Shown: positions 28,542 through 64,000, counted from the first letter of the stretch. The stretch is 64,000 nt of DNA from IMGVR_UViG_3300035661_000001:1-64000; one strand, 5' to 3'. Numbers and translations are program-made. The notes: generated by a model not told the origin, from the letters alone.

Positions 28542-30092
28542 ATGGATATGGCTAGTAAGAAAACTGCTCCGGCGGCTAAGAAAGCAAAGCCGGAGCGTGA
28601 TGAGTTTGGTCGTTTCAAAACGAAGCTGGCAGCAATTGTCGGCGTAGCTTCCAAGGTGGTCACGAAGAAAGAGCCTGTCAGTAATAAAATTCTGACGAAG
28701 GATCTTTCAAAACTTTTCAGTCGTGCCAGGGCGAAGAGTGGTAATCCCATTTTCCTTCGTGCGGTCAATCAGCGTACTTCCGATATCAAGGATCGGTACG
28801 GTTATACTTTCTCTTACGGTCGTCTTCTCCCCGAAGCTGATAGGGAAATGATTCTCATTGCTGAGAATGATTACGGAAGTGGATTGTTTTACCTTACGTA
28901 TGAAACCATGATCGGTGCGCAGCGTCGCTCCAGCTATTTCGATGCCAGTTTCGAGTGGGAGCAGATTGATCCTGATCACAAGGATTACCCTGCCCGCATG
29001 GCAGAATACGATGCGAATCGTATTAAGACGTTGAGCACACGTCTTCATTACGACGGCAAGATTGGGTGTGATCCCGAGGTTTTTGTGGAGAGCGCAGCTG
29101 GGAGTATGATCCCTGCATTCCTTTTTCTCCCCAGCAAAGAGAAGCCTGCGCGGACTCCCAATTGGTCGAAGCATTTTAACGGTCATGGTGGAACCACCAT
29201 GTATTGGGATGGATTTCAGGGAGAATACACTACCAAGGCAAATTATTGTCTTGGTTATCATGGCGACTCCATTGCCGCTGGTTTGCGCGGTATCTATGAC
29301 GCAGCTCGAAAAAGGTTCAAGGATAGCAAGCTGAGTCTGCGTTCCGTCTTCCATCTTTCTCCGGAGATTTTGGAAGGTGCTCTCGATGAGCACGTTGCGT
29401 TTGGTTGCATGCCGAGCCTCAACGCATATGGTCTGAAGGTGAATATGCCTCCCGCTCGTGAGGTTCCTTTCCGGTCTGCTGGTGGTCATATCCACTTCGG
29501 TATCGGTAAGAAAAACCATCCCAAGGCTGGGAAAATCGTCAAGGCTCTTGACGCTGTTCTTGGTGTGGCTTGCGTGAGTTTGTTCGCAGAGTTCGATGAT
29601 CCTAATCGTCGCAAGCTGTATGGTTTGCCTGGCGAGTACCGTCTCCCTCCTCACGGCATTGAATACCGTACGTTGTCCAACGCGTGGCTGAGCCACCCGT
29701 TGATCATGAACATGGTGTTCGATCTTGCAAGGAAGGCAGTTATCTTTGGCAAGGATGATTACTTCGAGAAGCATTGGGTTGCTACAGAAGAGGAAGTTAT
29801 CAATTGCATTATCAATTGCGACGTGAAGGCGGCGCATAAGATGATGGAGAGAAACAAGGAAGCATTCCTTCAGTTGCTGAAGGCTTCTTATAGCTCTGCA
29901 CAGCCTGCTGAATTGGAGATGCTATATCAGGTCTTCATCAAGGGCATTCGTTCGGCTATCAAAGACCCTCTCGATCTGACTACCAATTGGCGGTTGGAAA
30001 GCGGTTGGAAGCCTCATTCGGGCGTCGTCGGCGAGCCCAATGCGAGAACCTTCTTGTACAATCGTCGCAACGATAGTGAGTGCAAGATGTGA
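28542..30092 (+). CDS. phiEco32-like COOH-NH2 ligase type 2, copy 1
   Basis: IGCDPEVF, WDGFQGE, FGCMP, FRSAGGHIHFG, RRKLYG.PGEYR, GIEYRTLSN. Confidence 0.9.
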   Translation: MDMASKKTAPAAKKAKPERDEFGRFKTKLAAIVGVASKVVTKKEPVSNKILTKDLSKLFSRARAKSGNPIFLRAVNQRTSDIKDRYGYTFSYGRLLPEADREMILIAENDYGSGLFYLTYETMIGAQRRSSYFDASFEWEQIDPDHKDYPARMAEYDANRIKTLSTRLHYDGKIGCDPEVFVESAAGSMIPAFLFLPSKEKPARTPNWSKHFNGHGGTTMYWDGFQGEYTTKANYCLGYHGDSIAAGLRGIYDAARKRFKDSKLSLRSVFHLSPEILEGALDEHVAFGCMPSLNAYGLKVNMPPAREVPFRSAGGHIHFGIGKKNHPKAGKIVKALDAVLGVACVSLFAEFDDPNRRKLYGLPGEYRLPPHGIEYRTLSNAWLSHPLIMNMVFDLARKAVIFGKDDYFEKHWVATEEEVINCIINCDVKAAHKMMERNKEAFLQLLKASYSSAQPAELEMLYQVFIKGIRSAIKDPLDLTTNWRLESGWKPHSGVVGEPNARTFLYNRRNDSECKM

Positions 30093-30095
30093 TGA

Positions 30096-30143
30096 TTGAA
30101 TGATCTCCGAGGTAGAAATGGTATTACCTCGGAGATCATTCAA
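30096..30143. repeat. 19-bp perfect inverted repeat after ligase 1
   Basis: TTGAATGATCTCCGAGGTA / TACCTCGGAGATCATTCAA with a 10-nt loop. Confidence 0.9.
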
Positions 30144-30299
30144 GTAGGTTGAACGGTGCGAACCCATCTCCGAATATTGAGTGGGAAGTACACCAAACGA
30201 GATGATTAGCAACCTAACGTGGTGAAGGGTTGCAAGTTCCCATCCAGCATAATCTGGATGATTGTTTGCTACAAAGACTTCAACAAAGAGAAAGAACAC

Positions 30300-31718
30300 A
30301 TGACGATCACATATCAGCAGATTTATGAGCAGCGTCTTCACGTCAAGATGACGATTTTCCATCTGAAGGATTCCTTGCTGCCGGAATCCTATGCCATTGA
30401 TGCCAATGGCAAAGCTATGCGCGATGCCGATCATGCTATCCATCGAGCAAAGTCGCTGCCGACTGATGTTATTGCAATTTCGGAAATCTATGCGAACAAG
30501 CAGTATTGGATGGCTCGTCTCATCAACGCCAAGACCGGCTTGCTGATTAATAATTGCCATATCAATCCTGATGATTCTCTCGAAGTGATTTCGGAAGGTC
30601 CGATCGTTGATACTTTCAAAAAGCTCATGGATGATAATTGTCATCATTTCATGATGCATAATTTCACGATCGGTTCCGATCCTGAGATTTTTGTGGAGGA
30701 CGAGGAGGGCGGATGTATTCCCTCTTGGCTGTTCCTTCAAGGCAAGAACGGTACTGATAAGACTTCCAATCTTATGATGTACGGTGGGAAGGGTGCCCAA
30801 AAGATGTATTGGGATGGTTACCAGGCAGAGTTTTGCGTCTTCGCAAATAACTGCAATGAGTACCACACCGACTCGGTGGCTGCTGGTTTGCGCGGCGTTC
30901 ATGATGCTGCCCGAAAGAAGTTTCCCAAATCGAAGCTTTCGGCTACCAGCGTTTTCGATATCTCTTCGGAGATGATGTCGGCCGCTGCTGATGAGCATGT
31001 GGAATTTGGTTGCATGCCGAGCTACAATGCTTATGGTATTGCCCCCAATCTTCCCCCTGGTCGTGAGGTCCCTTTCCGATCCGCTGGTGGTCATATCCAC
31101 TTCGGAACGGGCAAGATGAGCCACGAAGAGGCGAATCCGATTATCAAGACTTTGGATAAGATCTTGGGTGTCGCCTGTGTCAGTTTGTTCGGTGCATTCG
31201 ATTCGCGCAAGCGTCGGCACTTCTACGGTCTTCCTGGTGAATACCGTCTTCCTCCTCATGGCGTGGAATATCGACCGTTGTCGAACGCATGGCTGATCCA
31301 TCCGTTCATCATGAACATCGTGATTGATCTTGCACGTAAGGTGGTCGTTCTTGCTCAGCGTGACTGGGCAGATAAGTGGATCTCTGATGAGGCAGAGGTT
31401 ATTGATACCATCATTCGATGTGATGTGGTAGCGGCTCGTGCCTCGCTGGAGAAGAACAAGAAGTTGTTCAAGCAGCTTCTGAAGGCTTGTTATAGCGAAG
31501 GTACCTACACCTGGGCTGATGAAGATGATATCGAGGCTATCTTCGGTGTCTTCATGAATGGTCTGGAGTCCGCGGTGGAAGATCCGCGCGACTTCGTCAA
31601 GAACTGGAAGCTCGATGCTTCTGATACCAGCGTTGATCGTTGGTTGCCTGGCAACAAGACTTTCAATTGTCGAGCTTCGACTGCGGTTAAGACGCTGCGT
31701 TCTGGCAAGAAGGTCTGA
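30300..31718 (+). CDS. phiEco32-like COOH-NH2 ligase type 2, copy 2
   Basis: IGSDPEIF, WDGYQAE, FGCMP, FRSAGGHIHFG, GVEYRPLSN; different N-terminal domain. Confidence 0.9.
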   Translation: MTITYQQIYEQRLHVKMTIFHLKDSLLPESYAIDANGKAMRDADHAIHRAKSLPTDVIAISEIYANKQYWMARLINAKTGLLINNCHINPDDSLEVISEGPIVDTFKKLMDDNCHHFMMHNFTIGSDPEIFVEDEEGGCIPSWLFLQGKNGTDKTSNLMMYGGKGAQKMYWDGYQAEFCVFANNCNEYHTDSVAAGLRGVHDAARKKFPKSKLSATSVFDISSEMMSAAADEHVEFGCMPSYNAYGIAPNLPPGREVPFRSAGGHIHFGTGKMSHEEANPIIKTLDKILGVACVSLFGAFDSRKRRHFYGLPGEYRLPPHGVEYRPLSNAWLIHPFIMNIVIDLARKVVVLAQRDWADKWISDEAEVIDTIIRCDVVAARASLEKNKKLFKQLLKACYSEGTYTWADEDDIEAIFGVFMNGLESAVEDPRDFVKNWKLDASDTSVDRWLPGNKTFNCRASTAVKTLRSGKKV

Positions 31719-31728
31719 GAGTCTGAGA

Positions 31729-31773
31729 CTAATGATGTCTAACCAATCGAACATATGGGTTAGACATCATTAG
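31729..31773. repeat. 16-bp perfect inverted repeat after ligase 2
   Basis: CTAATGATGTCTAACC / GGTTAGACATCATTAG. Confidence 0.9.
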
Positions 31774-31842
31774 GTTGAATAAACTGAAAGTGTTATAGTT
31801 CGTAAATAAACTTTCGGTATACCAAATCCGTGAGAGATCATC

Positions 31843-32817
31843 ATGACGTTCAAACGTTTGCCGCAATATATGCCACAGATGCAACAAGGACTGCGCATTG
31901 CGGAGCCGCCACCGACCATCCCTGACGTAAAAGCCAGCGATGCCAATCCATCGATCTTTGATGATCCTTGGAATGATGAAGATACTCAACCGGGTCTGGG
32001 ACCTGTAGTACATAAGCCGGAGAACAAAATGTCACAAAAGCCTAGGGAAATCGAACGAAGCAATCTGATGTTCGTGTTCGGAAGATATCGTGAAGGGTTC
32101 AATCTTCACCGTGTCGTCGCACGAGATAAAGGTTTCAAAGGAATTACTCGTACTCTTCCTGAGTTCAAGCTGATCAATATCAACGGAGAGTTTCCTGTTG
32201 TTATTCCTGATGGCAAGGGACGGGTTGTTGGAGAGGTTTATGAATGCGAAAATAGAACTTTCGACTTCATGGATTCTCTGGAAGAGTGTCCTGGAACACA
32301 AAACAGAGTGATCATTTCGTTGGAGAATGGCGCTCGGGCTCATATGTATCTGCTTCCCAAGCATAAAGCTCCTAATCGTGAGGAAGAGATTCCTTCAGGT
32401 GATTGGGTTGAATGGAAGCGTAACGAGCGTTCCAGAGAGAAGGAAAAGAAAGAAAAGTTCATCGCGGCGATGGCGAAGGGTAAAGCTGAAGCTAATCGTA
32501 AGCGAGCCATTGAAGAAGAGCAGGCTGCTCTAGCGGCTGCTCATAGAGTTGCCAATCCTACGAATCATCTGGCTAACTTGTGGGATCCTATTCGTGGCAA
32601 GTGGGAAAAAGTTCCGCCCTCGAATGATACCAAGACCTCTCGTGAGATCACGGTCTATTCTAGTAAGAACGGCAAGAATCATGTTCATGTCTCTGATGTT
32701 GATATGGTTGTACTTCGTGCCAAACTGATATCAGATAATCAGTCTGTCCCGGAAACGGATTCACAAATTCGTAACAAGATCATGTCGATCTATGGTGTCT
32801 GGTTCGAGATTGGTTGA
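31843..32817 (+). CDS. gamma-glutamylcyclotransferase (AIG2-like) domain protein with N- and C-terminal extensions
   Basis: MFVFGRYREG...FPVVI...VVGEVYE...MDSLEE...AHMYL. Confidence 0.75.
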   Translation: MTFKRLPQYMPQMQQGLRIAEPPPTIPDVKASDANPSIFDDPWNDEDTQPGLGPVVHKPENKMSQKPREIERSNLMFVFGRYREGFNLHRVVARDKGFKGITRTLPEFKLININGEFPVVIPDGKGRVVGEVYECENRTFDFMDSLEECPGTQNRVIISLENGARAHMYLLPKHKAPNREEEIPSGDWVEWKRNERSREKEKKEKFIAAMAKGKAEANRKRAIEEEQAALAAAHRVANPTNHLANLWDPIRGKWEKVPPSNDTKTSREITVYSSKNGKNHVHVSDVDMVVLRAKLISDNQSVPETDSQIRNKIMSIYGVWFEIG

Positions 32818-32872
32818 TTGTTAAGAGGCGGTTTGGAGACCGCTTCTTCAATCTTAAGAAAGGATATTTGGA

Positions 32873-33133
32873 ATGTCGGAGACTCGAAATATTAGAGTAC
32901 GAAGAGGTCGCCTGCCGATGCAGATTCATCCCATGAGATCGAAAGAAGATTTCAATACTGCGTGGGAAAAGAAAATGCGTGGTTACGGCGAAGAAAAAAA
33001 ATACCAGACTGATGTTTGGGGATTGTTGAATCGTGATGAGCTGTATGCTAAGTTGTTGGAATTGTCCACATCAAGGGTGATGAATGATCTTTCCAATTAT
33101 CGTGTATGGTGGGATCATCTTTTCTTGTACTGA
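32873..33133 (+). CDS. hypothetical protein
   Basis: AAGGA SD. Confidence 0.65.
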   Translation: MSETRNIRVRRGRLPMQIHPMRSKEDFNTAWEKKMRGYGEEKKYQTDVWGLLNRDELYAKLLELSTSRVMNDLSNYRVWWDHLFLY

Positions 33134-34050
33134 TCTTTGAAACAAGATGCGTTTGAGCATCTTATCAAAATGAAAAGTCTAACCTCTATTGGGTCGATTG
33201 AGTGTCGCGCTTAGATAGATTGAGGTATGTTGTCGATGCGACGGGCGATTGTTCAGAGGCTGAAGCCTCTTGATAGTAGTCTGGGTATGATGTACTATCT
33301 CATGCTATAGGCTGGAATGCTTGTGGTGATTTTTTGGGATGAGCGCTCTCCGCTTACCTACAATGCGCTAGTGAAAATATATCATAACCGGCTTGTAACC
33401 GGGAGTTGCAGACTGTAATGTCTGCGTGCGTAGGCGGGTGTGTGGGTAGCAACAGGCTTGAAGAGTTATTGAATCAATGTTCTATACATTGATTCAACGC
33501 GAGCTATCATCGTGGAATTGGAGTTTTTGTTTGTGTAGAAACATCTTTCTACACCGGGGATTCATACTCTTCGGTTTTGGGTGGTTAGAATCCCCCACAC
33601 AAGTGGAGATTGCAATCGGGTGCAAACCTGTGAACACTTGATTATTTAAACTCATGAATGGATCTATGAACTGCTGGAGTCGCAGCGTAAGTTGTGGCAT
33701 TGAAGGCGCAAAGTTCATAGTGAAAGTAGTGAGGGGGCGGATACCAGAGCCCGGTAAAATCCGTGACTGATTGTTTTGATAAGATGCTCAAGCGCATCTT
33801 GAAAATATTCTGTGCCCGTAGCTCAAAAATCAATTTGATATAATAGGTCACTGTTGACCTGATGCCTTGTGCTATATGGTTACATTTCCGAATGTTCATC
33901 TTATTTGGGATGAGCGTCTTCCTAACACGAAGAAGGTTGTGGATTCGATCTCCGCCGGGCACACCAGTTAGCGTCATCTGTTGGCGAAAATAAACACTCA
34001 AATCAACTTTTAGTTGCAACTAGTAAGTTGCAAAGGATAATAGTTTTCCA
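33134..34050 (+). ncRNA. ~0.9-kb hairpin-dense non-coding region (candidate large ncRNA or ncRNA cluster)
   Basis: No credible + strand ORF in an otherwise dense genome; many stems, including TTGAATCAATGT/ACATTGATTCAA at 33469-33497. Confidence 0.45.
33862..33966 (+). ncRNA. tRNA-like RNA with AAC loop, expanded D domain and CCA end
   Basis: TCTTC-CTAACAC-GAAGA; AGGTT variable loop; GTGGA-TTCGATC-TCCGC; CGGGCAC-A-CCA. Confidence 0.55.
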
Positions 34051-42173: not shown

Positions 42174-43190
42174 ATGAGAGCTGATATTGTGATTGATTTG
42201 GTGAACGGTGACTCCGGAAAAGGAAAAGTAACACATCATCTCCTTGGAGAATCTATCAGGAACAATGTTCCATATACTCATGCTGTCCGGTATGGAGGAT
42301 CGTCCAACGCCGGACATTCGATCTATCACAATGAAAAGAAGTTCGTTACCCATTTGATTCCTGCCGGAGTCTTTTTTGGTATCCGATCAGTCATTGGTCC
42401 TGGATGTGTTTTGAATGTCAAGGCTTTTTTTGATGAGCTTAATGATCTCAAAATTAATGGTATCGACTGTGATAGACTTGTTAAGATTGCGCATAACAGT
42501 CATATCGTGACTGATGAACATCTTAAAGAGGATGGTCTTGATACCAAAATCGGTACGACTAAGCGCGGCGTCGGTCCAGCTTACCGTGATAAGTATGGTA
42601 GAACTGGTGTCCGTGCTGAGTCTATTCCTGAGTTGAAGCCTTATCTGATTGATTTTCTTGATGAGATTTTCGATGAGTCCAAGGGAGAAGCCAACCTCAT
42701 GTTGGAAGGTGCACAGGGACATTACCTGGACCCCATCTTCGGAGACTATCCGTACGTTACTAGTTCTCATTGTGGTGTTGGTGGAGCCATCATCAATGGA
42801 GTTCCGCATACGGCGATTGATATGGTGTTCGGCGCTTGCAAAGCATACGATACTTATGTCGGTGCGAAGAAGTTTGAACCAGATGGTGATGATGTTCTAC
42901 CATTGCTTCGTAAGGTCGGGTCCGAGTTCGGAGCAACGACTGGAAGACCAAGACAGTGTAACTATTTGAATCTGACTTCTCTTCGTCGAGCTTGTGAAGT
43001 GAATGACGTTACCCATCTGGTAGTATCGAAGATGGATGTTCTTCAGGAAGTGAATGTTTGGAAAGTTATCTGTGGTAGTAAGCTTATCGATATGGGTAAT
43101 GAAGATGACTTCAAAAGAATCGTGCATGGGTATGTTAATTCCAAAGGTGACAGAGACGTAATCTTCTCTTACACGCCACACGGAATTTGA
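42174..43190 (+). CDS. purA: adenylosuccinate synthetase (short form)
   Basis: GDSGKGK, NAGHS, HLIPAG, GTTKRGVGP.Y, EGAQG, YPYVTSS, GATTGRPR. Confidence 0.95.
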   Translation: MRADIVIDLVNGDSGKGKVTHHLLGESIRNNVPYTHAVRYGGSSNAGHSIYHNEKKFVTHLIPAGVFFGIRSVIGPGCVLNVKAFFDELNDLKINGIDCDRLVKIAHNSHIVTDEHLKEDGLDTKIGTTKRGVGPAYRDKYGRTGVRAESIPELKPYLIDFLDEIFDESKGEANLMLEGAQGHYLDPIFGDYPYVTSSHCGVGGAIINGVPHTAIDMVFGACKAYDTYVGAKKFEPDGDDVLPLLRKVGSEFGATTGRPRQCNYLNLTSLRRACEVNDVTHLVVSKMDVLQEVNVWKVICGSKLIDMGNEDDFKRIVHGYVNSKGDRDVIFSYTPHGI

Positions 43191-52044: not shown

Positions 52045-52374
52045 ATGAGGAGTTTTTATTTTGTACTTCTTGTTGGTTTGGCTGGGTGCCAGCTCAATAC
52101 ACCACCTCAGCCTGGCTGGCATATTCAGAACAACACGGTTTGTTTCTCTGATCGTGCGGGGGTCGCTTCATGGAAGCATTGTGCTTCTCTGAGTGCAGAT
52201 CAAAAGACGAATTGTCAGTCGAGAAGTTTGACCGATCAATTCGGTCATCCGTTTGACAGGACGCCGGTTGATGTGTTCTACCATTCTCCCAATGGTGTGT
52301 CCAAAGTGAAAGTCATCTCTGGAGAATACCAGGATAAAGAATTCTACTGCCCTACCGAACGGGTATGGAAGTAA
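52045..52374 (+). CDS. putative lipoprotein
   Basis: GLAGC lipobox. Confidence 0.7.
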   Translation: MRSFYFVLLVGLAGCQLNTPPQPGWHIQNNTVCFSDRAGVASWKHCASLSADQKTNCQSRSLTDQFGHPFDRTPVDVFYHSPNGVSKVKVISGEYQDKEFYCPTERVWK

Positions 52375-52627: not shown

Positions 52628-52996
52628 TTGAGTAAAGTGTTTGTATATGGATCACTTCGTCAGGGCGGGTCTCTGAACGGAGTTCTCTATAATTCTGAAT
52701 GTGTTTCACAAGTTCGTACCAAGCCTGAATACACTTTGTACTCGCTAGGTGCTTTTCCATGCCTATGCGCTGGCGGGAAGCAAGCAGTACTCGGAGAAGT
52801 GTACGAGGTTTCAAAAGAAAAACTGGATCATCTAGATCGTATTGAGGGGCATCCGTATCTGTATGTCCGAACTCCAATCGTTCTGGAAGATAATACAGAA
52901 GCAGAAGTCTATCTCTTTCCTCAAGAGCCATTGAACAACGAAGTTGTTGAGGGTGGAGATTGGATTAAGTTTCAAGGATCAATCGATATCTTCTGA
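52628..52996 (+). CDS. gamma-glutamylcyclotransferase (AIG2/YtfP-like)
   Basis: VFVYGSLRQG...FPCL...VLGEVYEV...LDRIEGHP..YVR. Confidence 0.9.
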   Translation: MSKVFVYGSLRQGGSLNGVLYNSECVSQVRTKPEYTLYSLGAFPCLCAGGKQAVLGEVYEVSKEKLDHLDRIEGHPYLYVRTPIVLEDNTEAEVYLFPQEPLNNEVVEGGDWIKFQGSIDIF

Positions 52997-54040: not shown

Positions 54041-54766
54041 ATGTGTGGCATTTCAGCTTACAGTGGTATCACCGATCCCAATGCTCGTACCATTCTGACT
54101 TCTTCTCTTGGGTCAGCTATTGTTTCGCGAGGCTTTGGTGGAGCTGGCTTTGTCAGCCTGGACGGTCAAGGCGGCGTTTTCCATCAGCGAACGATTGACC
54201 ATTGGCGCAAAGCCGATGAAGCTTTTATTCAGGCAGCGGCGGAGCATGAAACGTGTATGATGCACTCTCGTGGTCCGATGTCGAAGGTTGACACTGATGT
54301 TCATCCTTTTCCCATCGTTCGTAACGATCAGATCGTTATGTGGGGCGCTCACAATGGTATGTTCGATGATGGTTGGGGTAGTGCCCGAGCCAACGGTCGA
54401 CACATCACCGTGGATAGCATGGAGCTGTTCGAGCTTTTGGCTGACGGTCGTGTTGCCGATATGTCGAAGCTCCGTGGTTGGGGCGTCATTACTTGGGTGA
54501 CTTCTGATGATCCCAATACGATCAAGATCTGTCGTCTGAATGGTAGTAGCGAACTGGTTGCAGCCCATCTGGAAGAGGGCGGTGTGGTGATTGCTTCGAC
54601 CAAGGATATCTTGAAATTCGGAGTCTCTACGGCTCAGCTGAATATTCGAGAGATGATTCCTATGACGATTGGTCGTACCTATCTCATGAGCAATGGCAAT
54701 ATCACTCGTACTGACGAGGGCGTTACTCTCAAAGAAGAGTACATGGGTTGGGGTTCGTACGATTGA
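54041..54766 (+). CDS. class II (Ntn) glutamine amidotransferase-like protein
   Basis: Starts MCGI (Cys nucleophile); RG..GAG; HSR; AHNGM; DSM. Confidence 0.85.
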   Translation: MCGISAYSGITDPNARTILTSSLGSAIVSRGFGGAGFVSLDGQGGVFHQRTIDHWRKADEAFIQAAAEHETCMMHSRGPMSKVDTDVHPFPIVRNDQIVMWGAHNGMFDDGWGSARANGRHITVDSMELFELLADGRVADMSKLRGWGVITWVTSDDPNTIKICRLNGSSELVAAHLEEGGVVIASTKDILKFGVSTAQLNIREMIPMTIGRTYLMSNGNITRTDEGVTLKEEYMGWGSYD

Positions 54767-55647: not shown

Positions 55648-56331
55648 ATGAGCGAGTCAGTAGAATCTATTCTTGATAGAGTACAGAGAAATACTATTGC
55701 TGTACGCCATACCTTAATTGGTAAGGGTTGGTTTACTGCGCTCGAAGCTATGGAACTCGGAGCCAGTCTCCACAAAGGCAAACGAAAAGATGGAAAGACT
55801 CCTGAGTTTTTTCATCAGATTGAAATTGCTGGGTTTCTACTGACCATCGCTGATATGCTTCTGTATCCTGAAGATACGATTGCGGTTTCTTTTCTGCACG
55901 ATGCTCCAGAAGATTATGATATTGGATTCGAAGAACTAGAATCTAAATTCAATGGTAGAATCGCCCGAGCAACTAAGCTGATTACTAAGACCCATCGTGG
56001 TAAAAAGGTCCTGCCAGAAGTATACTTCTCTGAAATGGTGGATGATGCAATCTCTTCTGTAGTAAAAGGAGTGGACAGAATTCATAATCAAGGAAGTATG
56101 TTGGGAGTCTTCCCTCGTGCTAAACAAGATCTTTATGTGGATGAGACTACAAATCTTATTCTTCCTATGCTCAAGAACGCTAGGAAGAAACATTTCAGGC
56201 AATATAATGCCTACATGAACATCATGTTCGTGTTGAAAGGGCAGCTCAGCATGATTGCTGCAATGCATGCCGCTTTAGATAAGGAAGAAGAGCATGCCGC
56301 TTTAGATAAGGAAGAAGAGCATGGCGCTTGA
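55648..56331 (+). CDS. HD-domain hydrolase, RelA/SpoT-HD (Mesh1/SAH)-like
   Basis: H.G.RKDG.TP...H...LHDAPED...VK..DRIHN. Confidence 0.85.
   Translation: MSESVESILDRVQRNTIAVRHTLIGKGWFTALEAMELGASLHKGKRKDGKTPEFFHQIEIAGFLLTIADMLLYPEDTIAVSFLHDAPEDYDIGFEELESKFNGRIARATKLITKTHRGKKVLPEVYFSEMVDDAISSVVKGVDRIHNQGSMLGVFPRAKQDLYVDETTNLILPMLKNARKKHFRQYNAYMNIMFVLKGQLSMIAAMHAALDKEEEHAALDKEEEHGA
56265..56323 (+). repeat. 27-bp in-frame tandem duplication (HAALDKEEE x2)
   Basis: GCATGCCGCTTTAGATAAGGAAGAAGA occurs twice. Confidence 0.95.
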
Positions 56332-57960: not shown

Positions 57961-57968
57961 TGATGAAT

Positions 57969-58898: not shown

Positions 58899-58977
58899 TT
58901 CAGATCAAGCAATAACCATCTGAGTTACTAACAGATTCAAACTAATAACAATCAATCAGAAAATTGGAACACAGATT

Positions 58978-60180
58978 ATGCTTGAACAACTAGTGGAAAT
59001 GGGCAACAACGCTCCCCGCGTATTTGTTTACAGCACCGGAGCTGGTGCTGGTATTCAAGAAAAGATCTGGAGAACACTGGGCTGTTCTAATTTTCTGATT
59101 GGCTGCGGTTTTCCATATGCCGGATCTCAAACTAGTAAATACATAGGATATACTCCAGAACGATTTGTAAATGGAGATGTTGCTATGGAACTGGCAATGG
59201 CAGCTTACATTGAAGCTTATGAGCCAGGTAGAAAAACTATTGGTGTTGGATTAAGTTGCTCGGTCGCCTCTCTAGAAGCACACAAGGGAGCCCATCGCAT
59301 CATTGCTTCCAGCTTCTCTGATAATGAATGTTTGACTTTCGCCGCCGAGATTCCTAAAGGATATGGTTTAGGTCAACGTGTGACCGATGGTAATTTGGCT
59401 GATGAGATTGGTGTTGCAACTATTCTCAAAGCCGCAGGTCTTTGGAGCGAAAACCAAATGATCGCCTCTTCTATTCATCCAGAAGCTAACATGGAAATCA
59501 TACCTCCTCTGAGCGAAGGTGATATAAAACCAACCTCATATTTCATGAGGTATTCTCCTGTGAATACTGCTGATCGAGCCAAGGAACTGATTCTCTCTCG
59601 GTCGTTGTTCTCTGCAAATGGTTCAAGAATGTCTGAGAGCAAAGTTGATGACAGCAAGGTAATTCATTATCCTGGCAGTTTCAATCCTTTGCACTTCGGT
59701 CATATTGATGGATCTGAAGCTATCAGACAAACAGCAGCCAAACGGTTTGGCGAGTGTCGAGATATCGTTTTTGATACCGTTGCTAATCCTCCGCACAAAG
59801 CTGCGCCAACTGCCGCTCAATTGCTTGACAAGATCGCAATGATGCGTGGTAGGAATTTTTGCCTCACTTCTAATGATCCCTTGTTTATCGACAAGGCTAG
59901 GAAACATCCTGGTGCATGGTTCGGTCTCGGAGCCGATATGCTGATTACTATGCTGGACCCCAAGTGGGGTGTAGATCCAATAGAACTTCTTGCTGAGCTT
60001 CAAAAGCTTAATGTTAAGATATTTGTTTTGGGTCGTTGTGTCAAAGGAGAGTTCATCACTTTGGAAGACATTGTCGTTTCCAATAAGGTGATGTTGATGC
60101 CGTATCTTGACACTCTATTGATTTCTGTTCCTGGAAGGTGGGATATTAGTTCGACGGAAATTCGAGCTAGATCCAATTAA
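58978..60180 (+). CDS. CinA/PncC-like domain fused to NadD-like (HxGH) adenylyltransferase
   Basis: N-domain STGAGAG...PY...A.ELAMAAY...GVGLSC...G.HR; C-domain YPGSFNPLHFGH, FGLGAD, DISSTEIR. Confidence 0.8.
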   Translation: MLEQLVEMGNNAPRVFVYSTGAGAGIQEKIWRTLGCSNFLIGCGFPYAGSQTSKYIGYTPERFVNGDVAMELAMAAYIEAYEPGRKTIGVGLSCSVASLEAHKGAHRIIASSFSDNECLTFAAEIPKGYGLGQRVTDGNLADEIGVATILKAAGLWSENQMIASSIHPEANMEIIPPLSEGDIKPTSYFMRYSPVNTADRAKELILSRSLFSANGSRMSESKVDDSKVIHYPGSFNPLHFGHIDGSEAIRQTAAKRFGECRDIVFDTVANPPHKAAPTAAQLLDKIAMMRGRNFCLTSNDPLFIDKARKHPGAWFGLGADMLITMLDPKWGVDPIELLAELQKLNVKIFVLGRCVKGEFITLEDIVVSNKVMLMPYLDTLLISVPGRWDISSTEIRARSN

Positions 60181-60356
60181 TCAGGTACTGATAAAAAAGA
60201 AACATATCGTTATGATGAATGTCTTATATTAAATATTAATATACAATAGGACGTTTATTGTATCGGTATGGGGTGGCACCGGAGCAGTCGGATTACGTGC
60301 GACTATTAGTTTGGTAGAACTAGTAGGTGGTTTAATTGCCCCGGCGCCATCATCTT

Positions 60357-60428
60357 ATCTAGGTAGCTCAATGGCAGAGCTTCGCATCTAAGCGAAAGAC
60401 ATGAGTTCGATCCTCATCCTAGAACCTA
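60357..60428 (+). tRNA. tRNA-like gene with 6-nt anticodon loop AUCUAA (CUA, or UCU with a deletion)
   Basis: TCTAGG/CCTAGA; GCTC-AATGGCA-GAGC; TTCGC-ATCTAA-GCGAA; ATGAG-TTCGATC-CTCAT; C-CTA. Confidence 0.7.
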
Positions 60429-60454
60429 ATAAACGAACGAAATGGTGATAAAAA

Positions 60455-60706
60455 ATGGAATATGAATGTATCGTGACTAATCGTGGCACTCCCGAGATGT
60501 GGCGAGTCAAACATAAACCTTGTCAGCGGGTATTCGCTATCTGCACAGATGGTGATAAAGTATATCTAACTGGTACCCATCCACCAATCTATCAAAACAA
60601 TGATGGATATAGTTTGGAAAAATCAGAAGGATCAATTGAAGTATATCCGCCAGGAGCTTGGTTTACTATTGAGTTCTTCAATGAATACTACATCAAAGAT
60701 TGTTGA
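60455..60706 (+). CDS. hypothetical protein
   Basis: ORF track. Confidence 0.6.
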   Translation: MEYECIVTNRGTPEMWRVKHKPCQRVFAICTDGDKVYLTGTHPPIYQNNDGYSLEKSEGSIEVYPPGAWFTIEFFNEYYIKDC

Positions 60707-60738
60707 AACTTGTCTTTCTCTTTGAAAGAAAATAAAAA

Positions 60739-61710
60739 ATGAAATCATTTGTGTCTGCATTGGCTGCATGTGTTTTGCTTTTTCCAGCCGAAGTTAGGGC
60801 GGAAGATAGGACGCTGAATGATTTCACATTCAGCGTTCCATTCAATGCTGATCCTGGTTTCATTGAAAACCGTTTTGGATTCAAACAACTTGTCACGCCT
60901 AGCCTACCCATCAGTGGCGGACTCACTGCTTTTACTATGGGCGAACAGGTTGCTGTAGACATTAAACTTCATGATTATATTGGAGTATCCGGCAAGTTCT
61001 TGGGCTCATTTCAGGCGGGTGGATCATCGGCAGGAGATGATTATCATCTTGCTGCCGGATATGCTATCAAAGCAGATGGCAGTATCAATGTAAAATTCTT
61101 TAGAGCTGAAGAAATCGGTGCTCAATGGATTTTTCATATCAAAGCTTCTTATCGAAAAAATCAAGGTATACTCGCTGATACTGGTGGCGTTGCCATTAAT
61201 TTCGATAATGACTATTACAAGGACCTTGTTGGTAAGAAGAATATCAAACCAGAAGAAGTTGCCGATCATTTCAAAGCTGATCTGAAGAAGACTTTGAAAG
61301 AAAGTTTGTCGAAACTGACTACTGGTAGTCAAGCCACCTATGTTTCAGGTGGAGGATCTGTTTCTTGGATTGAGACGTTCAACCATAATTTTGCCATGCA
61401 GGCATCATCTGGTTTGATGATAGGTCCGAATACAATCAAAATTGGAGATGTGGAATCTCCAGCCATTCAATCCGTCGAATATAGTGCTGGCATCGCTGGC
61501 TATGTTTCTTTGGATCCTATTACTCCAATCACGTTTTGTATTGAATACGAACATACTGTGGTTCCAGGAAGTAAAAATAATCTTGTTCTGGCAAGTCTAA
61601 TCTTCAATAAAAAGAATTCCCCAATTGCAGTAACGGCAAGTGCTGGTAGATATTCTATTGGAGATGAGAACACTCCCATCGGTGCGGTGGGTATAGACTT
61701 ATACTTCTAA
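60739..61710 (+). CDS. putative outer-membrane beta-barrel protein
   Basis: Signal peptide ending EVRA; amphipathic alternating strands; terminal GIDLYF. Confidence 0.65.
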   Translation: MKSFVSALAACVLLFPAEVRAEDRTLNDFTFSVPFNADPGFIENRFGFKQLVTPSLPISGGLTAFTMGEQVAVDIKLHDYIGVSGKFLGSFQAGGSSAGDDYHLAAGYAIKADGSINVKFFRAEEIGAQWIFHIKASYRKNQGILADTGGVAINFDNDYYKDLVGKKNIKPEEVADHFKADLKKTLKESLSKLTTGSQATYVSGGGSVSWIETFNHNFAMQASSGLMIGPNTIKIGDVESPAIQSVEYSAGIAGYVSLDPITPITFCIEYEHTVVPGSKNNLVLASLIFNKKNSPIAVTASAGRYSIGDENTPIGAVGIDLYF

Positions 61711-61723
61711 ACAAAAGGTTAAT

Positions 61724-62071
61724 ATGTATCTCAGCATAGATATGGATAACTATCCATTGCCGCTCTTGCCAATGTCTCGTGACTTGGTTGATAAGTTAAT
61801 CGAACTACGTGTCGTGACTCTGATGATGTCTTCAGAGGAAGAGGATTTGAATTTCCTCCGCGCACATGAAGTAGAAATTGATCCAGCTCATTCAATCATA
61901 ATTGAGCTGGGATGGAAACGTCCCCGAGGCGCACATGGACTTGATGTGGACTTTTCCATCTATGAAACAGGAGCCACAACAGATGAAGCTATCGAGATCG
62001 CTATTAATCAGTTTCAATTTCATCTGGAACATTTTCCAGACGATCCTCTCAATACTTTTAAGGAGATCTAG
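61724..62071 (+). CDS. acidic hypothetical protein
   Basis: AAGG SD. Confidence 0.7.
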   Translation: MYLSIDMDNYPLPLLPMSRDLVDKLIELRVVTLMMSSEEEDLNFLRAHEVEIDPAHSIIIELGWKRPRGAHGLDVDFSIYETGATTDEAIEIAINQFQFHLEHFPDDPLNTFKEI

Positions 62072-62075
62072 AAAA

Positions 62076-62819
62076 ATGTCTTTCCGAATTGTTCCGTATA
62101 AAAAGGGCAGTGAAGGTGCAAAGCTGCTTGCCTTGAAGATGACCGAGATTAGTGGTAAGAAGGTTGCCGCCGGTGATCCTAGCTATGACCATCGCAACCT
62201 TCTTTGGGGAACTACAAAGTATCCCTTGCTGAATTTGCAGCCAGCTGCAAGTATCGCTATTGCTCAGAACAAATTGAGCACGCTCAACAAGCTGAAACAG
62301 TCTGACGTTTCTGTTCCTGAATTCACTACTCTCAGAGCAACGGCAGAGGAGTGGATTAGAAACGGCACGGTAGTCGTGGCTCGCACGCTACTGAACGCTT
62401 CTGAGGGGCGTGGAATCGTTGTTTGTCGTACGGTTGAGGAACTTGTTCCGGCGCCTTTGTATGTCAAGCTGGTTACCAAGGATAAAGAATTCAGAGTTCA
62501 TGCCTGTAATGGTGTGGCTATTGATTTGCAGGAGAAGCGTCGCCGTAATGGAGCGCGTAATCCTGATGGCTCACGAATTGACGGTATGATTCGCAATATC
62601 GACAATAACTGGGTTTTTTGCAGGAACGGTATTGCTGAGCCCCGAGGACTGAGAGATCTGGGTATTAAAGCCGTTCAAGCCCTGGGTCTGCTGTTTGGTG
62701 CAGTGGATATCATTTACAACAGCCAGACCGGGCTAATGTATGTTTTGGAAGTTAATACCGCGCCTGGATTGTGTGAAAGCACCGCGACTCGGTATGCTCA
62801 GGCGTTTCTGGCGCTGTGA
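62076..62819 (+). CDS. ATP-grasp ligase (phiEco32/RimK-like)
   Basis: NKLSTL..L..VPEF...R..GRGI...KEFRVH...FGAVDII...VLEVNTAPGL. Confidence 0.9.
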   Translation: MSFRIVPYKKGSEGAKLLALKMTEISGKKVAAGDPSYDHRNLLWGTTKYPLLNLQPAASIAIAQNKLSTLNKLKQSDVSVPEFTTLRATAEEWIRNGTVVVARTLLNASEGRGIVVCRTVEELVPAPLYVKLVTKDKEFRVHACNGVAIDLQEKRRRNGARNPDGSRIDGMIRNIDNNWVFCRNGIAEPRGLRDLGIKAVQALGLLFGAVDIIYNSQTGLMYVLEVNTAPGLCESTATRYAQAFLAL

Positions 62820-62893
62820 GTAAATGACTCCCTGGATCTGTCCGATCCATTCATTGAGGTGACAACTCATAGGGAGTTCTAAGGAATTGTAAT

Positions 62894-64000
62894 ATGGACG
62901 AAGACGAGGATGACATTGAACAAGTAGATGCGCCAGCACCAGCTGAGGTGCCAGCTCCAATCGCCCAACCTGCCCAGCAAGTAGTTGAGAGAGGCGGCTT
63001 TGCAGCTTTCCAAGCCGCATTGGTTGCGGCAGGCGAAGCTGCCAGAGTAGTTAATCGCAACGTCATGAATTGGGGACGTATTGAGGAAGCAGATCGGCAA
63101 GTAGATCAACTTCTTGAGGAAGAGGAACAGCTTGTCGATGAAGCTTTTCATGAAGCGGAACATCGACGTCTTCATGATATAGAAGCGGGTCAAGTTCGAC
63201 CACGAGGCATAAATTGGTTTAGAGAGCTGGCTGTTAACGGCGGTGTCTTCGGCAGAGAAATTGCACCGAGACAAGCGGTTCCACAACCTGCGCTACCAGG
63301 ACCATATGTGCCATATGTAGCGTATCAGGAACGAGTACAAGATCCAATCTTCATCAACGACGACGATATACAACGAGCAGCAGCAAGACTTAGGGAACAA
63401 TTGAATGTTCCCGATCCATTCAACGAGGAAGACCCAAGAGCGGTAGGAAATGATATGAATTACGATCAATTGGTGAGACGTTTTCCAGCTTTGACTGATC
63501 GGTATCTTCCCGATCTTTCCAACCGGAACAACGCAGCCCGAGCACTTCAGCAGTTCGATCTCGATCAGTCTGGTAATGCTGTGGAGCGTGATCTGGAGCG
63601 TAATGCCCTCACCCTTTACCTCGCCGGTCATGCTCAGGCAGCTAACATCAACTATGCTTGGTGTGCCGAATGTGAGATGATGATTGGATTTGAAAATCAT
63701 ACTCACTGTCCGTTTTGTACCTATGCCATGGTTGAGCGTGGTGAGGGTGAGGCTCGTGGATCTCATCATCGAGATGGTTGTGCCAATTGTGGCGAATGCT
63801 GTCGAGTGAAGGGTCACCAGCACTGTCCTTCTTGTGATGCCCACATGGAACGAGGTTGTCGTTATTGTGGTAAGTGCGCAGCATGTTGTGCATGTGTCCT
63901 GTGCACTGTGGCGGGTTGCCAGTACATGCAGGAATGTGAGGATTGCAAGAAGTGCTATGAACACTGCACTTGTGTGGCAGTTGCATCTTCTGATCCCACT
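62894..64000 (+). CDS. Partial large protein with acidic N-terminus and Cys-rich CxxC array (probable amidoligase N-terminus), cut by window end
   Basis: 369 open codons from ATG 62894 (AAGGA SD): MDEDEDDIEQ...CAEC...CPFC...CANCGECC...CPSC...CRYCGKC; absent from the ORF track because it has no stop in the window. Confidence 0.8.
   Translation, partial: MDEDEDDIEQVDAPAPAEVPAPIAQPAQQVVERGGFAAFQAALVAAGEAARVVNRNVMNWGRIEEADRQVDQLLEEEEQLVDEAFHEAEHRRLHDIEAGQVRPRGINWFRELAVNGGVFGREIAPRQAVPQPALPGPYVPYVAYQERVQDPIFINDDDIQRAAARLREQLNVPDPFNEEDPRAVGNDMNYDQLVRRFPALTDRYLPDLSNRNNAARALQQFDLDQSGNAVERDLERNALTLYLAGHAQAANINYAWCAECEMMIGFENHTHCPFCTYAMVERGEGEARGSHHRDGCANCGECCRVKGHQHCPSCDAHMERGCRYCGKCAACCACVLCTVAGCQYMQECEDCKKCYEHCTCVAVASSDPT

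What the first reader, a model, noticed from the sequence alone, without database searches (positions are those of the whole stretch)
28542..64000. Dispersed and duplicated phiEco32-type peptide-ligase system
Seen: tandem COOH-NH2 ligases with identical catalytic motifs but unrelated N-domains (28542, 30300), GGCT (31843), second GGCT (52628), Ntn-GATase (54041), ATP-grasp (62076) and a Cys-rich probable amidoligase (62894). Established: this gene set forms a compact cluster in phiEco32-like phages and is predicted to build and recycle a gamma-glutamyl peptide or protein tag; the product is not known to me. Inference: duplicated ligases with different N-domains imply several targets, such as host or phage proteins or a small-molecule defence inhibitor.
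Basis: partly seen in the sequence, partly recalled or inferred. Interest (0 to 1): 0.7.

Follow-up and report, generated by a model that had tools for sequence, protein, structure and literature searches.

The report
Expanded phage amide-ligase system with LysM
A roughly 450-kb uncultivated phage carries an enlarged, partly scattered version of the little-understood phiEco32-type set of amide-bond-forming enzymes, and one of these enzymes has a cell-wall-binding (LysM) module inserted beside its active site, which gives the old idea that the system modifies the host cell wall a concrete test.

Summary
The window is the first 64 kb of a 451,956-bp IMG/VR phage genome, and the system runs past the window's end. 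A compact core lies at 62.1-69.1 kb: a RimK-like ATP-grasp enzyme, a Cys-rich Amidoligase_2 with a LysM insert, a stand-alone class-II glutaminase, three small conserved ORFs and a third PF14395 ligase paralogue. That third ligase has lost the family's near-invariant catalytic residues. There are two satellite modules: tandem intact long-form ligases plus a long GGACT at 28.5-32.8 kb, and a short GGACT plus a second glutaminase at 52.6-54.8 kb. Order and content are conserved in two other megaphages (433 and 447 kb) at 40-76% protein identity. The core triad is also kept in two more distant contigs.

The ligases' N-domains look unrelated by BLAST but are divergent homologues (hhalign probability 92%).

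No product or target is known. The LysM insertion favours a peptidoglycan precursor as target, an idea already suggested in the literature for phiEco32. Protein tagging and a small-molecule product remain open. I rate it a new variant of a known kind, of moderate interest.

The parts
28542..30092 (+). Ligase 1: long-form PF14395 carboxylate-amine ligase, 516 aa (the database copy starts 2 codons later, 514 aa). It has a Lys/Ala-rich N-terminal tail, a beta-rich N-domain (about aa 45-165) and an intact catalytic domain (about aa 165-500).
   Evidence: Pfam 55.2 bits. All near-invariant residues are kept. AF2 pLDDT 93. Z about 15 to GshF/GCL, Dop, PafA and YbdK, and about 14 to GS, over aa 160-500. 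Orthologues are 52-54% identical over the full length in G001 and G002.
30300..31718 (+). Ligase 2: tandem paralogue, 472 aa from ATG 30300 (the ORF is open from GTG 30219). Intact catalytic domain and a strongly divergent N-domain.
   Evidence: Pfam 50.1 bits. 56% identity to ligase 1 over 319 aa. Key residues kept. N-domain homology to the main N-domain family: hhalign probability 91.8%. Orthologues of 455-473 aa.
31843..32817 (+). Long GGACT/AIG2-like gamma-glutamyl(amine) cyclotransferase, 324 aa. The core is aa 72-195, with conserved N- and C-terminal extensions. It lies directly downstream of the tandem ligases in all three megaphages.
   Evidence: PF06094 60.6 bits. Atlas structural match of aa 72-194 to GGACT clusters. 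Alignment A4. Synteny.
52628..52996 (+). Short GGACT, 122 aa. It is the counterpart of the GGCT at the end of the PhiCHU cluster.
   Evidence: PF06094 80.9 bits. 36% identity to PhiCHU gp30. 58-62% identical orthologues.
54041..54766 (+). Stand-alone class-II (Ntn) glutamine amidotransferase domain, 241 aa, starting Met-Cys-Gly. Paralogue of the core GAT-II.
   Evidence: Cys2, Arg-Gly, His-x-Arg, His-Asn-Gly and Asp-Ser are invariant in both paralogue lineages.
62076..62819 (+). RimK-like ATP-grasp ligase, 247 aa. First gene of the compact core.
   Evidence: phrog_2599 E 9e-61. 34-35% identity to the ATP-grasp proteins of ECBP2 and PhiCHU. Weak PDB sequence hits to D-Ala-D-Ala ligases. Orthologues 72-76% identical.
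62894..64000 (+). N-terminal 369 aa of a 727-aa protein that ends at genome position 65077, outside the window. It has an acidic Pro/Ala-rich N-terminus, a Cys-rich probable metal-binding region (about aa 255-360, 17 conserved Cys) and an Amidoligase_2 core (about aa 385-727). A LysM domain (aa about 586-630) is inserted just before the EFR motif.

The core continues beyond the window. Genome coordinates continue the window's numbering:
- 65689-66678 (+): stand-alone class-II glutaminase, 329 aa, starting MCG.
- 66763-66981 and 66962-67165 (+): two small conserved ORFs. The first has an acidic C-terminal tail.
- 67177-67635 (+): 152-aa Cys-rich and Lys-rich protein.
- 67665-69083 (+): ligase 3, a 472-aa catalytically degenerate PF14395 paralogue.
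- 69093-69124: a perfect 14-bp hairpin.
   Evidence: - Amidoligase: PF12224 and PF01476. LysM hits in PDB by sequence and by fold (2mkx, TMt 0.73). Clean insertion in 13 of 29 homologues. Invariant residues kept.
- Glutaminase: PF13522 35.1 bits and phrog_14519 E 3e-19.
- Small ORFs and the Lys-rich protein.
- Ligase 3. Its orthologues are 48-50% identical with the same losses. It is absent at this position in L022 and L023.
- Hairpin.

Best explanation
The feature is a working, enlarged phiEco32-type amidoligase system, conserved in a clade of roughly 430-450-kb phages from microbial-mat and sediment metagenomes.

Shown:
- There are five ATP-dependent carboxylate-amine ligases or ligase-like proteins of three folds or families: one ATP-grasp, one Amidoligase_2 and three PF14395.
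- There are also two stand-alone class-II glutaminases and two GGACT cyclotransferases.
- All except the third PF14395 copy keep their family's conserved catalytic residues.
- The amidoligase carries a LysM domain inserted beside its active-site EFR motif.

Inferred:
1. The core glutaminase hydrolyses glutamine and passes ammonia (or a gamma-glutamyl group) to the amidoligase. The amidoligase activates a substrate carboxylate as an acyl-phosphate and amidates it. This would be a functional analogue of MurT/GatD or of the Asn-synthetase-type mDAP amidotransferases.
2. LysM holds a GlcNAc-containing substrate on the cytoplasmic side, most likely lipid II, a UDP-MurNAc-peptide or a recycled muropeptide.
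3. The ATP-grasp enzyme and the two active long-form ligases add further amino-acid or amine groups.
4. The GGACT enzymes remove or recycle gamma-glutamyl groups as 5-oxoproline.
5. The dead ligase copy serves as a non-catalytic binding or scaffold subunit.
6. The outcome would be an altered cell wall during infection, for example superinfection exclusion or protection from lysins.

I put about 0.85 on the identity of the system and about 0.35 on the cell-wall target.
For: - Family assignments.
- Fold of ligase 1: Z about 15 to gamma-glutamylcysteine ligases, YbdK, PafA and Dop, and about 14 to GS. The amidoligase model matches YbdK, GCL and GS, plus LysM.
- Catalytic residues: kept in ligases 1 and 2 and lost in ligase 3 and its orthologues. 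Amidoligase invariants are kept. Glutaminase Cys2, RG, HxR, HNG and D are invariant. The GGACT GEVY Glu is kept.
- LysM: Pfam 32.7 bits; PDB LysM domains E 4e-4 to 3e-3; fold match to the AtlA LysM, TMt 0.73, rmsd 2.4 A. It is a discrete 47-50-aa insertion that replaces a 5-24-aa loop.
- Coupling of glutaminase and amidoligase: they are adjacent here, in ECBP2 and PhiCHU, and in four further relatives. They are fused in a 52-member viral cluster of 933-aa proteins.
- Conservation: synteny of the whole set in G001 and G002, and of the core in L022 and L023.
- Literature: the cell-wall/superinfection suggestion for phiEco32 is cited in PMC10580990.
- Neighbouring envelope-type genes: a signal peptide with an OMP-like C-terminal ..IDLYF at 60739-61710, and a lipoprotein-like signal sequence ..LAGC at 52045-52374. 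These readings come from the sequence alone.
Against: - No product, substrate or phenotype is known for any member of this system.
- LysM is present in only 13 of 29 homologues of this amidoligase clade and in none of the canonical phage amidoligases checked. It may mark a lineage-specific use.
- The protein has no signal peptide, and LysM domains usually bind polymeric peptidoglycan outside the cytoplasm.
- Co-occurrence of the satellite modules with the core is shown only in genomes that are syntenic throughout. It therefore does not prove a functional link. In the contig L021 a long-form ligase stands alone.
- RimK membership of the ATP-grasp is below Pfam's cut-off (19.5 against 21 bits).
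Confidence: 0.4

Rival explanations
1. A Pup-like or RimK/LysW-like protein modification system. The ligases join a C-terminal or side-chain carboxylate of a small protein to amines, such as lysines of phage or host proteins or a pathway intermediate. The glutaminases act as deamidases or isopeptidases. GGACT recycles epsilon-(gamma-glutamyl)-lysine.
For: - The ligase 1 catalytic domain is as close in fold to the Pup ligase PafA and the depupylase Dop (Z 14.7-15.0) as to GCL or YbdK.
- A conserved ~70-aa ORF with an acidic C-terminal tail (..IEDE..IQDE) lies in the core (next gene after the glutaminase), three genes downstream of the RimK-like ATP-grasp.
- Lys-rich tails on ligase 1 and on the 152-aa core protein could act as acceptors.
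- The known substrate of GGACT is gamma-glutamyl-epsilon-lysine (my own knowledge of the family).
Against: - The C-terminal residue of the small ORF is not conserved: V in G001 and P in G002.
- No Pup-like GGQ/GGE motif is present, and no equivalent small ORF was recognised in ECBP2 or PhiCHU.
- This reading gives the LysM insert no role.
Confidence: 0.2
2. Synthesis and turnover of a small gamma-glutamyl amide or short peptide metabolite. Examples are glutamylated polyamines, or an amine protected by a gamma-glutamyl group as in butirosin biosynthesis. The product would serve phage metabolism or counter-defence.
For: - The nearest solved folds include gamma-glutamylcysteine ligases and GS-like gamma-glutamyl-amine synthetases.
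- The combination of an ATP-grasp enzyme with GGCT recalls BtrJ/BtrG. The combination of a GS-like ligase with an amidotransferase-type hydrolase recalls PuuA/PuuD (my own knowledge).
- Multi-copy Amidoligase_2, GATase_6 and PF14395 sets occur in another large phage contig, as expected for a diversifying metabolic pathway.
Against: - No transporter, tailoring enzyme or precursor gene was recognised among the neighbours. Most neighbours have no family hit.
- The LysM and Cys-rich additions suggest a macromolecular or glycan-bearing substrate.
Confidence: 0.2
3. The modules are not one system. The core (62.1-69.1 kb), the ligase-ligase-GGACT trio (28.5-32.8 kb) and the GGACT/glutaminase pair (52.6-54.8 kb) act on different substrates. 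They share only enzyme families, through duplication.
For: - About 20-30 kb of mostly unrelated or unknown genes, including tRNAs, a PurA-like gene and an HD_4 gene, separate the modules.
- The core occurs without a PF14395 gene inside it in L022 and L023.
- A long-form ligase occurs alone in L021 and L018.
Against: - In the compact clusters of small phages the same families sit together.
- Ligase 3 physically links the PF14395 family to the core in three genomes.
- All modules are retained in order at 40-76% identity in all three megaphages.
Confidence: 0.25

Closest known systems
phiEco32-type amidoligase gene cluster of small phages (seen here in Escherichia phage ECBP2 and Pseudomonas phage PhiCHU; described by Iyer et al. 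2009, Mol Biosyst, which could not be retrieved)
   Same: It has the same five families: PF14395 ligase, Amidoligase_2, class-II GATase, RimK-like ATP-grasp and (in PhiCHU) GGCT. Identity to the canonical proteins is 28-36%. The function is equally unknown.
   Different: - The ligases are a long form, with an extra ~120-aa N-domain and a C-terminal extension (430-560 aa against 268 aa).
- The ligase is triplicated, and one copy is catalytically dead.
- The amidoligase carries a Cys-rich region and a LysM insert.
- The GAT-II is a bare glutaminase domain (241-329 aa against 517-667 aa) and is duplicated. GGACT is also duplicated.
- The active ligases lie about 33 kb from the core.
- No homologues of the cluster's other conserved proteins (phrog_13063, 13102, 4877) were found by BLAST of the ECBP2 and PhiCHU cluster proteins against this genome's ORFs.
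MurT/GatD and AsnB1/LtsA-type peptidoglycan amidotransferases
   Same: This is a works-like comparison only. An ATP-dependent ligase paired with a glutaminase would amidate a carboxylate of a cell-wall precursor at the cytoplasmic face. Here the ligase carries a peptidoglycan-binding LysM.
   Different: There is no sequence relationship. MurT is a Mur-ligase fold and GatD a class-I GATase. No activity on cell-wall precursors has been shown for any Amidoligase_2 protein.
Pupylation enzymes PafA and Dop; YbdK/GCS2; gamma-glutamylcysteine ligases
   Same: They share the carboxylate-amine ligase (glutamine-synthetase-like) fold with ligase 1, at Z 13-15 over about 255-280 residues.
   Different: Sequence identity is 10-13%. 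No Pup-like substrate gene is present. The phage enzymes have their own N-domain, which has no recognisable relative.
RimK / LysX with ribosomal protein S6 / LysW
   Same: An ATP-grasp ligase of RimK type is encoded in the same core cluster as a small protein with an acidic C-terminal tail.
   Different: The Pfam RimK score is below the cut-off. The tail's last residue is not conserved. No lysine- or arginine-pathway genes are present.

Membership tests
PF14395 phiEco32-like COOH-NH2 ligase type 2 | HMM match above the curated cut-off (25 bits) | tested here: met
   Ligase 1 scores 55.2 bits and ligase 2 scores 50.1 bits. Ligase 3 does NOT meet it: 13.7 bits and no hit. It is tied to the family only by 31% identity to ligase 1.
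PF14395 phiEco32-like COOH-NH2 ligase type 2 | Near-invariant catalytic-site residues (DPE, D223, E228, GGHxHxG, R356, EYR) | tested here: met
   Met for ligases 1 and 2. Not met for ligase 3 or its G001 and G002 orthologues, which have 10-12 changes at 18 key sites.
PF14395 phiEco32-like COOH-NH2 ligase type 2 | Glutamine-synthetase / GCS2-like carboxylate-amine ligase fold | tested here: met
   AF2 model with pLDDT 93. Z 13-15 to GshF, YbdK, PafA, Dop, GCL and GS.
PF14395 phiEco32-like COOH-NH2 ligase type 2 | ATP-dependent amide-bond formation | not testable with these tools
   Needs an enzyme assay.
phiEco32-type amidoligase system | Co-occurrence of PF14395 ligase, Amidoligase_2, class-II GATase and ATP-grasp (with or without GGCT) in one phage | tested here: met
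   The same set is present in G001 and G002.
phiEco32-type amidoligase system | All members in one compact cluster | tested here: not met
   The core is compact (62.1-69.1 kb), but its PF14395 member is the degenerate copy. The two intact ligases and both GGACT genes lie 9-34 kb upstream.
PF12224 Amidoligase_2 | HMM match above cut-off (22 bits), with family-invariant residues (GxExE, HxH, EFR) | tested here: met
   28.8 bits. Invariant columns E154, E156, H220, H222 and E399-F400-R401 of alignment A2 are present in the window's protein. phrog_7469 E 2e-11.
PF01476 LysM | HMM match above cut-off (20.9 bits) and a beta-alpha-alpha-beta fold | tested here: met
   32.7 bits. PDB LysM domains E 4e-4 to 3e-3. 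The model shows strand-helix-helix-strand and matches 2mkx at TMt 0.73.
PF01476 LysM | Binding of GlcNAc-containing glycan (peptidoglycan or chitin) | not testable with these tools
   Needs a binding assay.
Class-II (Ntn) glutamine amidotransferase | N-terminal nucleophile Cys directly after the initiator Met, plus conserved glutamine-binding residues | tested here: met
   Both copies start MCG. R31-G32, H75-x-R77, H107-N108-G109 and D128 are invariant in six sequences. The roles of these residues are from my own knowledge of GlmS and PurF.
Class-II (Ntn) glutamine amidotransferase | Pfam GATase_6 match above cut-off (27 bits) | tested here: met
   The 65689-66678 copy scores 35.1 bits. The 54041 copy has no Pfam hit. 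It is placed by paralogy (E 4e-49) and by the Atlas.
PF06094 GGACT / AIG2-like cyclotransferase | HMM match above cut-off (22.8 bits), with the Glu of the GEVY motif | tested here: met
   60.6 and 80.9 bits. The Glu is kept in both copies here. The G001 orthologue of the long copy has Gln. The role of the Glu is from my own knowledge of human GGACT.
RimK family of ATP-grasp ligases | Pfam RimK match above cut-off (21 bits) | tested here: not met
   19.5 bits. Membership of the ATP-grasp superfamily is supported by phrog_2599 E 9e-61 and by the C-terminal match to D-Ala-D-Ala ligases. The canonical ECBP2 protein also scores only 19.8 bits.
Pupylation system (PafA/Dop/Pup) | A Pup-like small protein with a C-terminal GGQ/GGE, and PafA/Dop family membership | tested here: not met
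   Only the fold is similar (Z about 15, 12-13% identity). No PafA or Dop sequence match was found. The small core ORF has an acidic tail but no GGQ/GGE.

The most novel reading that the evidence does not exclude
The system is a phage-encoded peptidoglycan-precursor editing machine. A LysM-guided, glutamine-dependent amidoligase, together with accessory ligases, would rewrite the stem peptide of the host's cell wall during infection. A dead ligase paralogue would act as a substrate-holding subunit, and GGACT enzymes would trim gamma-glutamyl bonds. This would be the first assigned function for the phiEco32-type cluster, which is carried by hundreds of phages, and a new class of enzymes acting on the cell wall.
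Probability: 0.25. Interest if true: 0.8.

Novelty: new variant of a known kind. Interest (0 to 1): 0.55.

Why it matters
The phiEco32-type amidoligase cluster occurs in hundreds of isolated phages: 308 records match ligase 1 alone. It has had no assigned function since it was described in 2009.

This megaphage lineage adds three pieces of information that the small-phage clusters lack:
- a peptidoglycan-binding module built into the amidoligase next to its active site;
- a clean separation between catalytically intact and catalytically dead ligase paralogues;
- a conserved small acidic-tailed ORF in the core.

Each one turns a vague prediction into a specific experiment. If the cell-wall reading holds, it would reveal a way in which phages remodel the host envelope from the inside. 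If the protein-tag reading holds, it would be a phage counterpart of pupylation or RimK-type tailing.

Tried and rejected
- Complex prediction of the amidoligase (aa 240-727) with the core glutaminase (aa 1-240) gave no answer (score 0.00). It counts neither for nor against binding.
- Megablast of the ligase region against isolated phages found nothing. Pattern-based search for related loci with the amidoligase also found nothing. Relatives were reached through ligase 1 and the genome search.
- The ligase N-domain has no recognisable relative. The Atlas features search gave no hit and every structural TM was below 0.5. The high-rmsd Foldseek alignments to whole GS chains did not hold up as an N-domain match in the VIA second look, which aligned only aa 160-500.
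- I suspected that the ~500-aa genes downstream of the core in L022 and L023 were ligase 3 homologues. They are not. They are homologues of 71302-72468.
- I asked whether the PurA-like gene is PurZ (the Z-genome enzyme). It is much closer to cellular PurA (E 1e-50) than to PurZ structures (E 4e-10).
- I considered that the GC mosaic might be an assembly chimera. Both GC junctions are syntenic in relatives, so I rejected this.
- Stop-codon recoding, suggested by a phage release-factor gene, shows no clear signal in open-frame coverage.
- Promoter and terminator scans did not define operons. Promoter-like sites were at or below the count in shuffled sequence.
- No small ORF comparable to the acidic-tailed one was recognised in ECBP2 or PhiCHU.
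- Iyer et al. 2009 could not be read. Its content is quoted only through PMC10580990 and from memory.
They are now described under the last in-window part.

Full report
SETTING. The window is the first 64 kb of a 451,956-bp IMG/VR virus record with terminal repeats. Nearly all genes lie on the + strand. The DNA is found in microbial-mat and sediment metagenomes. No isolated phage shares nucleotide similarity with it.

OBSERVATION.
- Ligases and GGACT genes. Pfam and PHROG scans confirm two tandem PF14395 COOH-NH2 ligases (28542-30092 and 30219/30300-31718). They also confirm a GGACT domain inside a 324-aa protein (31843-32817) and a short GGACT (52628-52996).
- ATP-grasp. A RimK-like ATP-grasp enzyme (phrog_2599, E 9e-61) lies at 62076-62819.
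- Glutaminase. The ORF at 54041 begins Met-Cys-Gly-Ile and has no Pfam hit. It is 38% identical (E 4e-49) to a PF13522 GATase_6 protein just outside the window. The Atlas places it among viral GATase_6 clusters (score 0.95, TM about 0.8).
- Amidoligase. The ORF starting at 62894 is 727 aa long and ends at 65077. The window holds only its acidic N-terminus and Cys-rich region. The Amidoligase_2 match lies beyond the window.

So all seven gene calls hold.

WHAT THE WINDOW'S END HID. Directly downstream lie:
- the rest of the amidoligase;
- a 329-aa class-II glutaminase (65689-66678);
- two small ORFs (66763-67165);
- a 152-aa Cys-rich and Lys-rich protein (67177-67635);
- a third PF14395 paralogue (67665-69083), which ends at a perfect 14-bp hairpin.

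The genome therefore has a compact core (62.1-69.1 kb) with the same families as the canonical cluster, plus two satellite modules. A whole-genome family search finds no further copies.

THE THREE LIGASES. Ligases 1 and 2 are 56% identical over their C-terminal 319 residues and show no BLAST similarity in their N-termini. At least 785 long-form homologues (430-560 aa) exist in metagenomes, many of them on contigs of 90-466 kb.

The N-termini of 120 of 126 long-form proteins fall into one BLAST-linked family. That family includes the G001 and G002 counterparts of ligase 2. The ligase 2 type (three sequences) matches this family by profile comparison, with probability 91.8% and E 7e-7. The N-domains are therefore divergent copies of one module, not unrelated domains.

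An AF2 model of ligase 1 (pLDDT 93) aligns over aa 160-500 with several carboxylate-amine ligases:
- gamma-glutamylcysteine ligases, YbdK, PafA and Dop, at Z about 15;
- glutamine synthetases, at Z about 14.

The beta-rich N-domain has no recognisable relative.

Column conservation over 119-129 family members shows that ligases 1 and 2 keep every near-invariant residue. These include residues shared with the short enzymes of ECBP2 and PhiCHU: D177-P-E179, D223, E228, C289, N294, R311, G314-G-H316-x-H318-x-G320, R356, Y360, R367 and E374-Y-R376.

Ligase 3 and its two orthologues have lost D177, P178, D223, C289, G314, H316, H318, G320, Y360 and R376. Ligase 3 is 31% identical to ligase 1 over aa 68-493, including the N-domain. 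It is conserved at 48-50% identity between genomes, much like its intact paralogues. It is therefore a maintained, probably non-catalytic paralogue.

In a search with ligase 3, 26 of 139 aligned representatives have three or more changes at 18 key sites. On a FastTree, the 22 strongly degenerate rows need only 5 state changes, against 20.5 for shuffled labels. Ligase 3 sits in a supported clade of seven rows, all of them degenerate. Dead copies are therefore a recurrent feature of this family. The tree is quick and unrooted, with many weak branches, so the number of origins is uncertain.

THE AMIDOLIGASE. The 727-aa protein has four parts:
- an acidic, Pro/Ala-rich N-terminus;
- a region with 17 conserved cysteines (about aa 255-360);
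- an Amidoligase_2 core that keeps all family-invariant residues;
- a LysM domain.

The evidence for the LysM domain is as follows:
- Pfam scores it at 32.7 bits.
- It matches solved LysM domains by sequence.
- In the AF2 model (pLDDT 86.5) it forms strand-helix-helix-strand and superposes on the AtlA LysM (TMt 0.73, rmsd 2.4 A, 40% identity).

In the alignment of 29 homologues, LysM is a discrete 47-50-residue insertion between the conserved ..LAGR and DTTVEFR motifs in 13 sequences. The others have a 5-24-residue loop there. The canonical amidoligases of ECBP2 and PhiCHU have neither LysM nor the Cys-rich region.

GLUTAMINASES AND GGACT. Both glutaminase lineages keep Cys2, R-G, H-x-R, H-N-G and D-S, and neither carries a synthase domain. 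A 52-member viral cluster fuses GATase_6 to Amidoligase_2. The two genes are adjacent in every relative examined. Both GGACT copies keep the Glu of the GEVY motif.

CONSERVATION. Two megaphages (432,844 and 446,541 bp) carry the whole 27-79 kb region in the same order, at 40-76% protein identity. They have three or two tandem ligases followed by the long GGACT. They also keep the short GGACT, the second glutaminase and the complete core, including ligase 3.

Two more distant contigs (42.5 and 214 kb) keep the order ATP-grasp, amidoligase, glutaminase and the small core ORFs, with no PF14395 gene between the homologues of 67177 and 69848; the 42.5-kb one keeps all three small ORFs, the 214-kb one only the Lys-rich protein. 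Other large contigs show a lone long-form ligase. One carries a dense set of four Amidoligase_2, two GATase_6 and two PF14395 genes.

The gene set therefore co-occurs in relatives. However, the close relatives are syntenic throughout, which limits what this says about functional linkage.

MECHANISM. Shown: the enzyme families, their intact or lost catalytic residues, the LysM insertion, and the adjacency and fusion of glutaminase and amidoligase.

Inferred, from the established chemistry of these superfamilies:
- Carboxylates are activated as acyl-phosphates and joined to amines.
- A class-II glutaminase supplies ammonia or handles gamma-glutamyl groups.
- GGACT releases 5-oxoproline from gamma-glutamyl amines.

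The LysM insert next to the EFR motif suggests a GlcNAc-bearing substrate. A secondary source reports that Iyer et al. suggested that the phiEco32 amidoligase and GATase modify the cell wall to block superinfection (PMC10580990). The LysM finding is independent support for that idea. It would make the pair a functional analogue of MurT/GatD or of the mDAP amidotransferases.

Genes with envelope-type signals lie beside two modules. These are a signal peptide with a C-terminal ..IDLYF at 60739-61710, and a lipoprotein-like ..LAGC signal sequence at 52045-52374. Both readings come from the sequence only.

Against this model, LysM is lineage-specific, the protein is cytoplasmic by sequence, and nothing has been measured.

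The rivals remain open:
- Pup-like or RimK/LysW-like protein modification. Support comes from the fold similarity to PafA and Dop, the conserved ~70-aa ORF ending ..IEDE or ..IQDE, and the Lys-rich tails.
- A small gamma-glutamyl metabolite.
- Independent modules.

NOVELTY. The families and their association in phages are known. New here are:
- the long-form, N-domain-bearing ligase subfamily, with its duplication and recurrent catalytic death;
- the amidoligase bearing LysM and a Cys-rich region;
- the bare, duplicated glutaminases;
- the conserved split into a core plus satellites in phages of about 450 kb.

I file it as a new variant of a known kind. Interest is moderate, because it makes a 15-year-old open question testable.

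Noticed in passing
whole genome (G000); window 1-64000 lies in the higher-GC arm: Base composition is strongly mosaic. Positions 1-70 kb are about 44% GC (GC3 0.44), 70-410 kb about 32% (GC3 0.21), 412-437 kb about 57-63% (GC3 0.65) and 437-452 kb about 47%. Both junctions are syntenic in two related megaphages, so this is not an assembly chimera. The cause is unknown.
   Followed up: partly
window 1-254 and genome 451702-451956: The terminal repeat consists of two head-to-tail copies of a 127-bp unit, each holding a tRNA-Arg(TCT), present at both ends of the record. The true termini, or circular permutation, cannot be judged from this.
   Followed up: no
window 42174-43190 (+): A short (338-aa) adenylosuccinate-synthetase homologue (PF00709, E 6e-74). 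It is much closer to cellular PurA (PDB E 1e-50) than to the phage PurZ enzymes of 2-aminoadenine genomes (E 4e-10). It is 76% identical in G002 and was not seen in the G001 region.
   Followed up: partly
genome 407194-408282 (+), outside the window: A phage-encoded class-I peptide chain release factor (PCRF plus RF-1 domains), 69-71% identical in both relatives. Open-frame coverage gives no clear sign of stop-codon reassignment. TAG is a rare stop (11 of 223 long frames).
   Followed up: partly
window 60739-61710 (+) and 52045-52374 (+): Two envelope-type proteins sit next to system modules. One is a 323-aa protein with a signal peptide and a C-terminal ..IDLYF, as in outer-membrane beta-barrels. 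The other is a 109-aa protein with a lipoprotein-like signal sequence ending ..LAGC. Neither has a Pfam or PHROG hit. Together they suggest a diderm host.
   Followed up: no
window 7526-8254 (-), genome 146944-147708 (-), and two copies in L008: A 242-aa minus-strand ORF is repeated within the genome (53-59% identity) and occurs twice in the G002 ligase region at non-syntenic places. It may be a mobile or homing element. No Pfam hit.
   Followed up: partly
window 28707-29837 (-) and 29922-31754 (-): Very long antisense open frames (376 and 610 aa) lie opposite the two ligase genes and reappear opposite their orthologues in relatives. They are most likely shadow frames of the conserved sense genes, not genes.
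   Followed up: no
window 14422-15534 (+), 55648-56331 (+), 58978-60180 (+): Other recognisable genes in the region are an RNA ligase with an OB-fold domain (PF09414, PF21189), an HD_4 (RelA/SpoT-type hydrolase) domain protein, and a protein with a C-terminal cytidylyltransferase-like domain. An HD_4 gene also lies near the core in L022 and L023.
   Followed up: no
window 60357-60426 (+): ARAGORN reports a 70-nt tRNA-like gene with an undetermined, two-base anticodon. It lies about 1.7 kb upstream of the core's first gene (the ATP-grasp at 62076). Ordinary tRNAs (Phe, Leu, Ile-TAT, Val) are scattered through 39.5-58 kb.
   Followed up: no
L011:13805-14827 (G001 orthologue of the long GGACT): In the 433-kb relative, the Glu of the GEVY motif of the long GGACT is replaced by Gln (GQLY), while the short GGACT keeps it. 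The long copy may be inactive or altered there.
   Followed up: no
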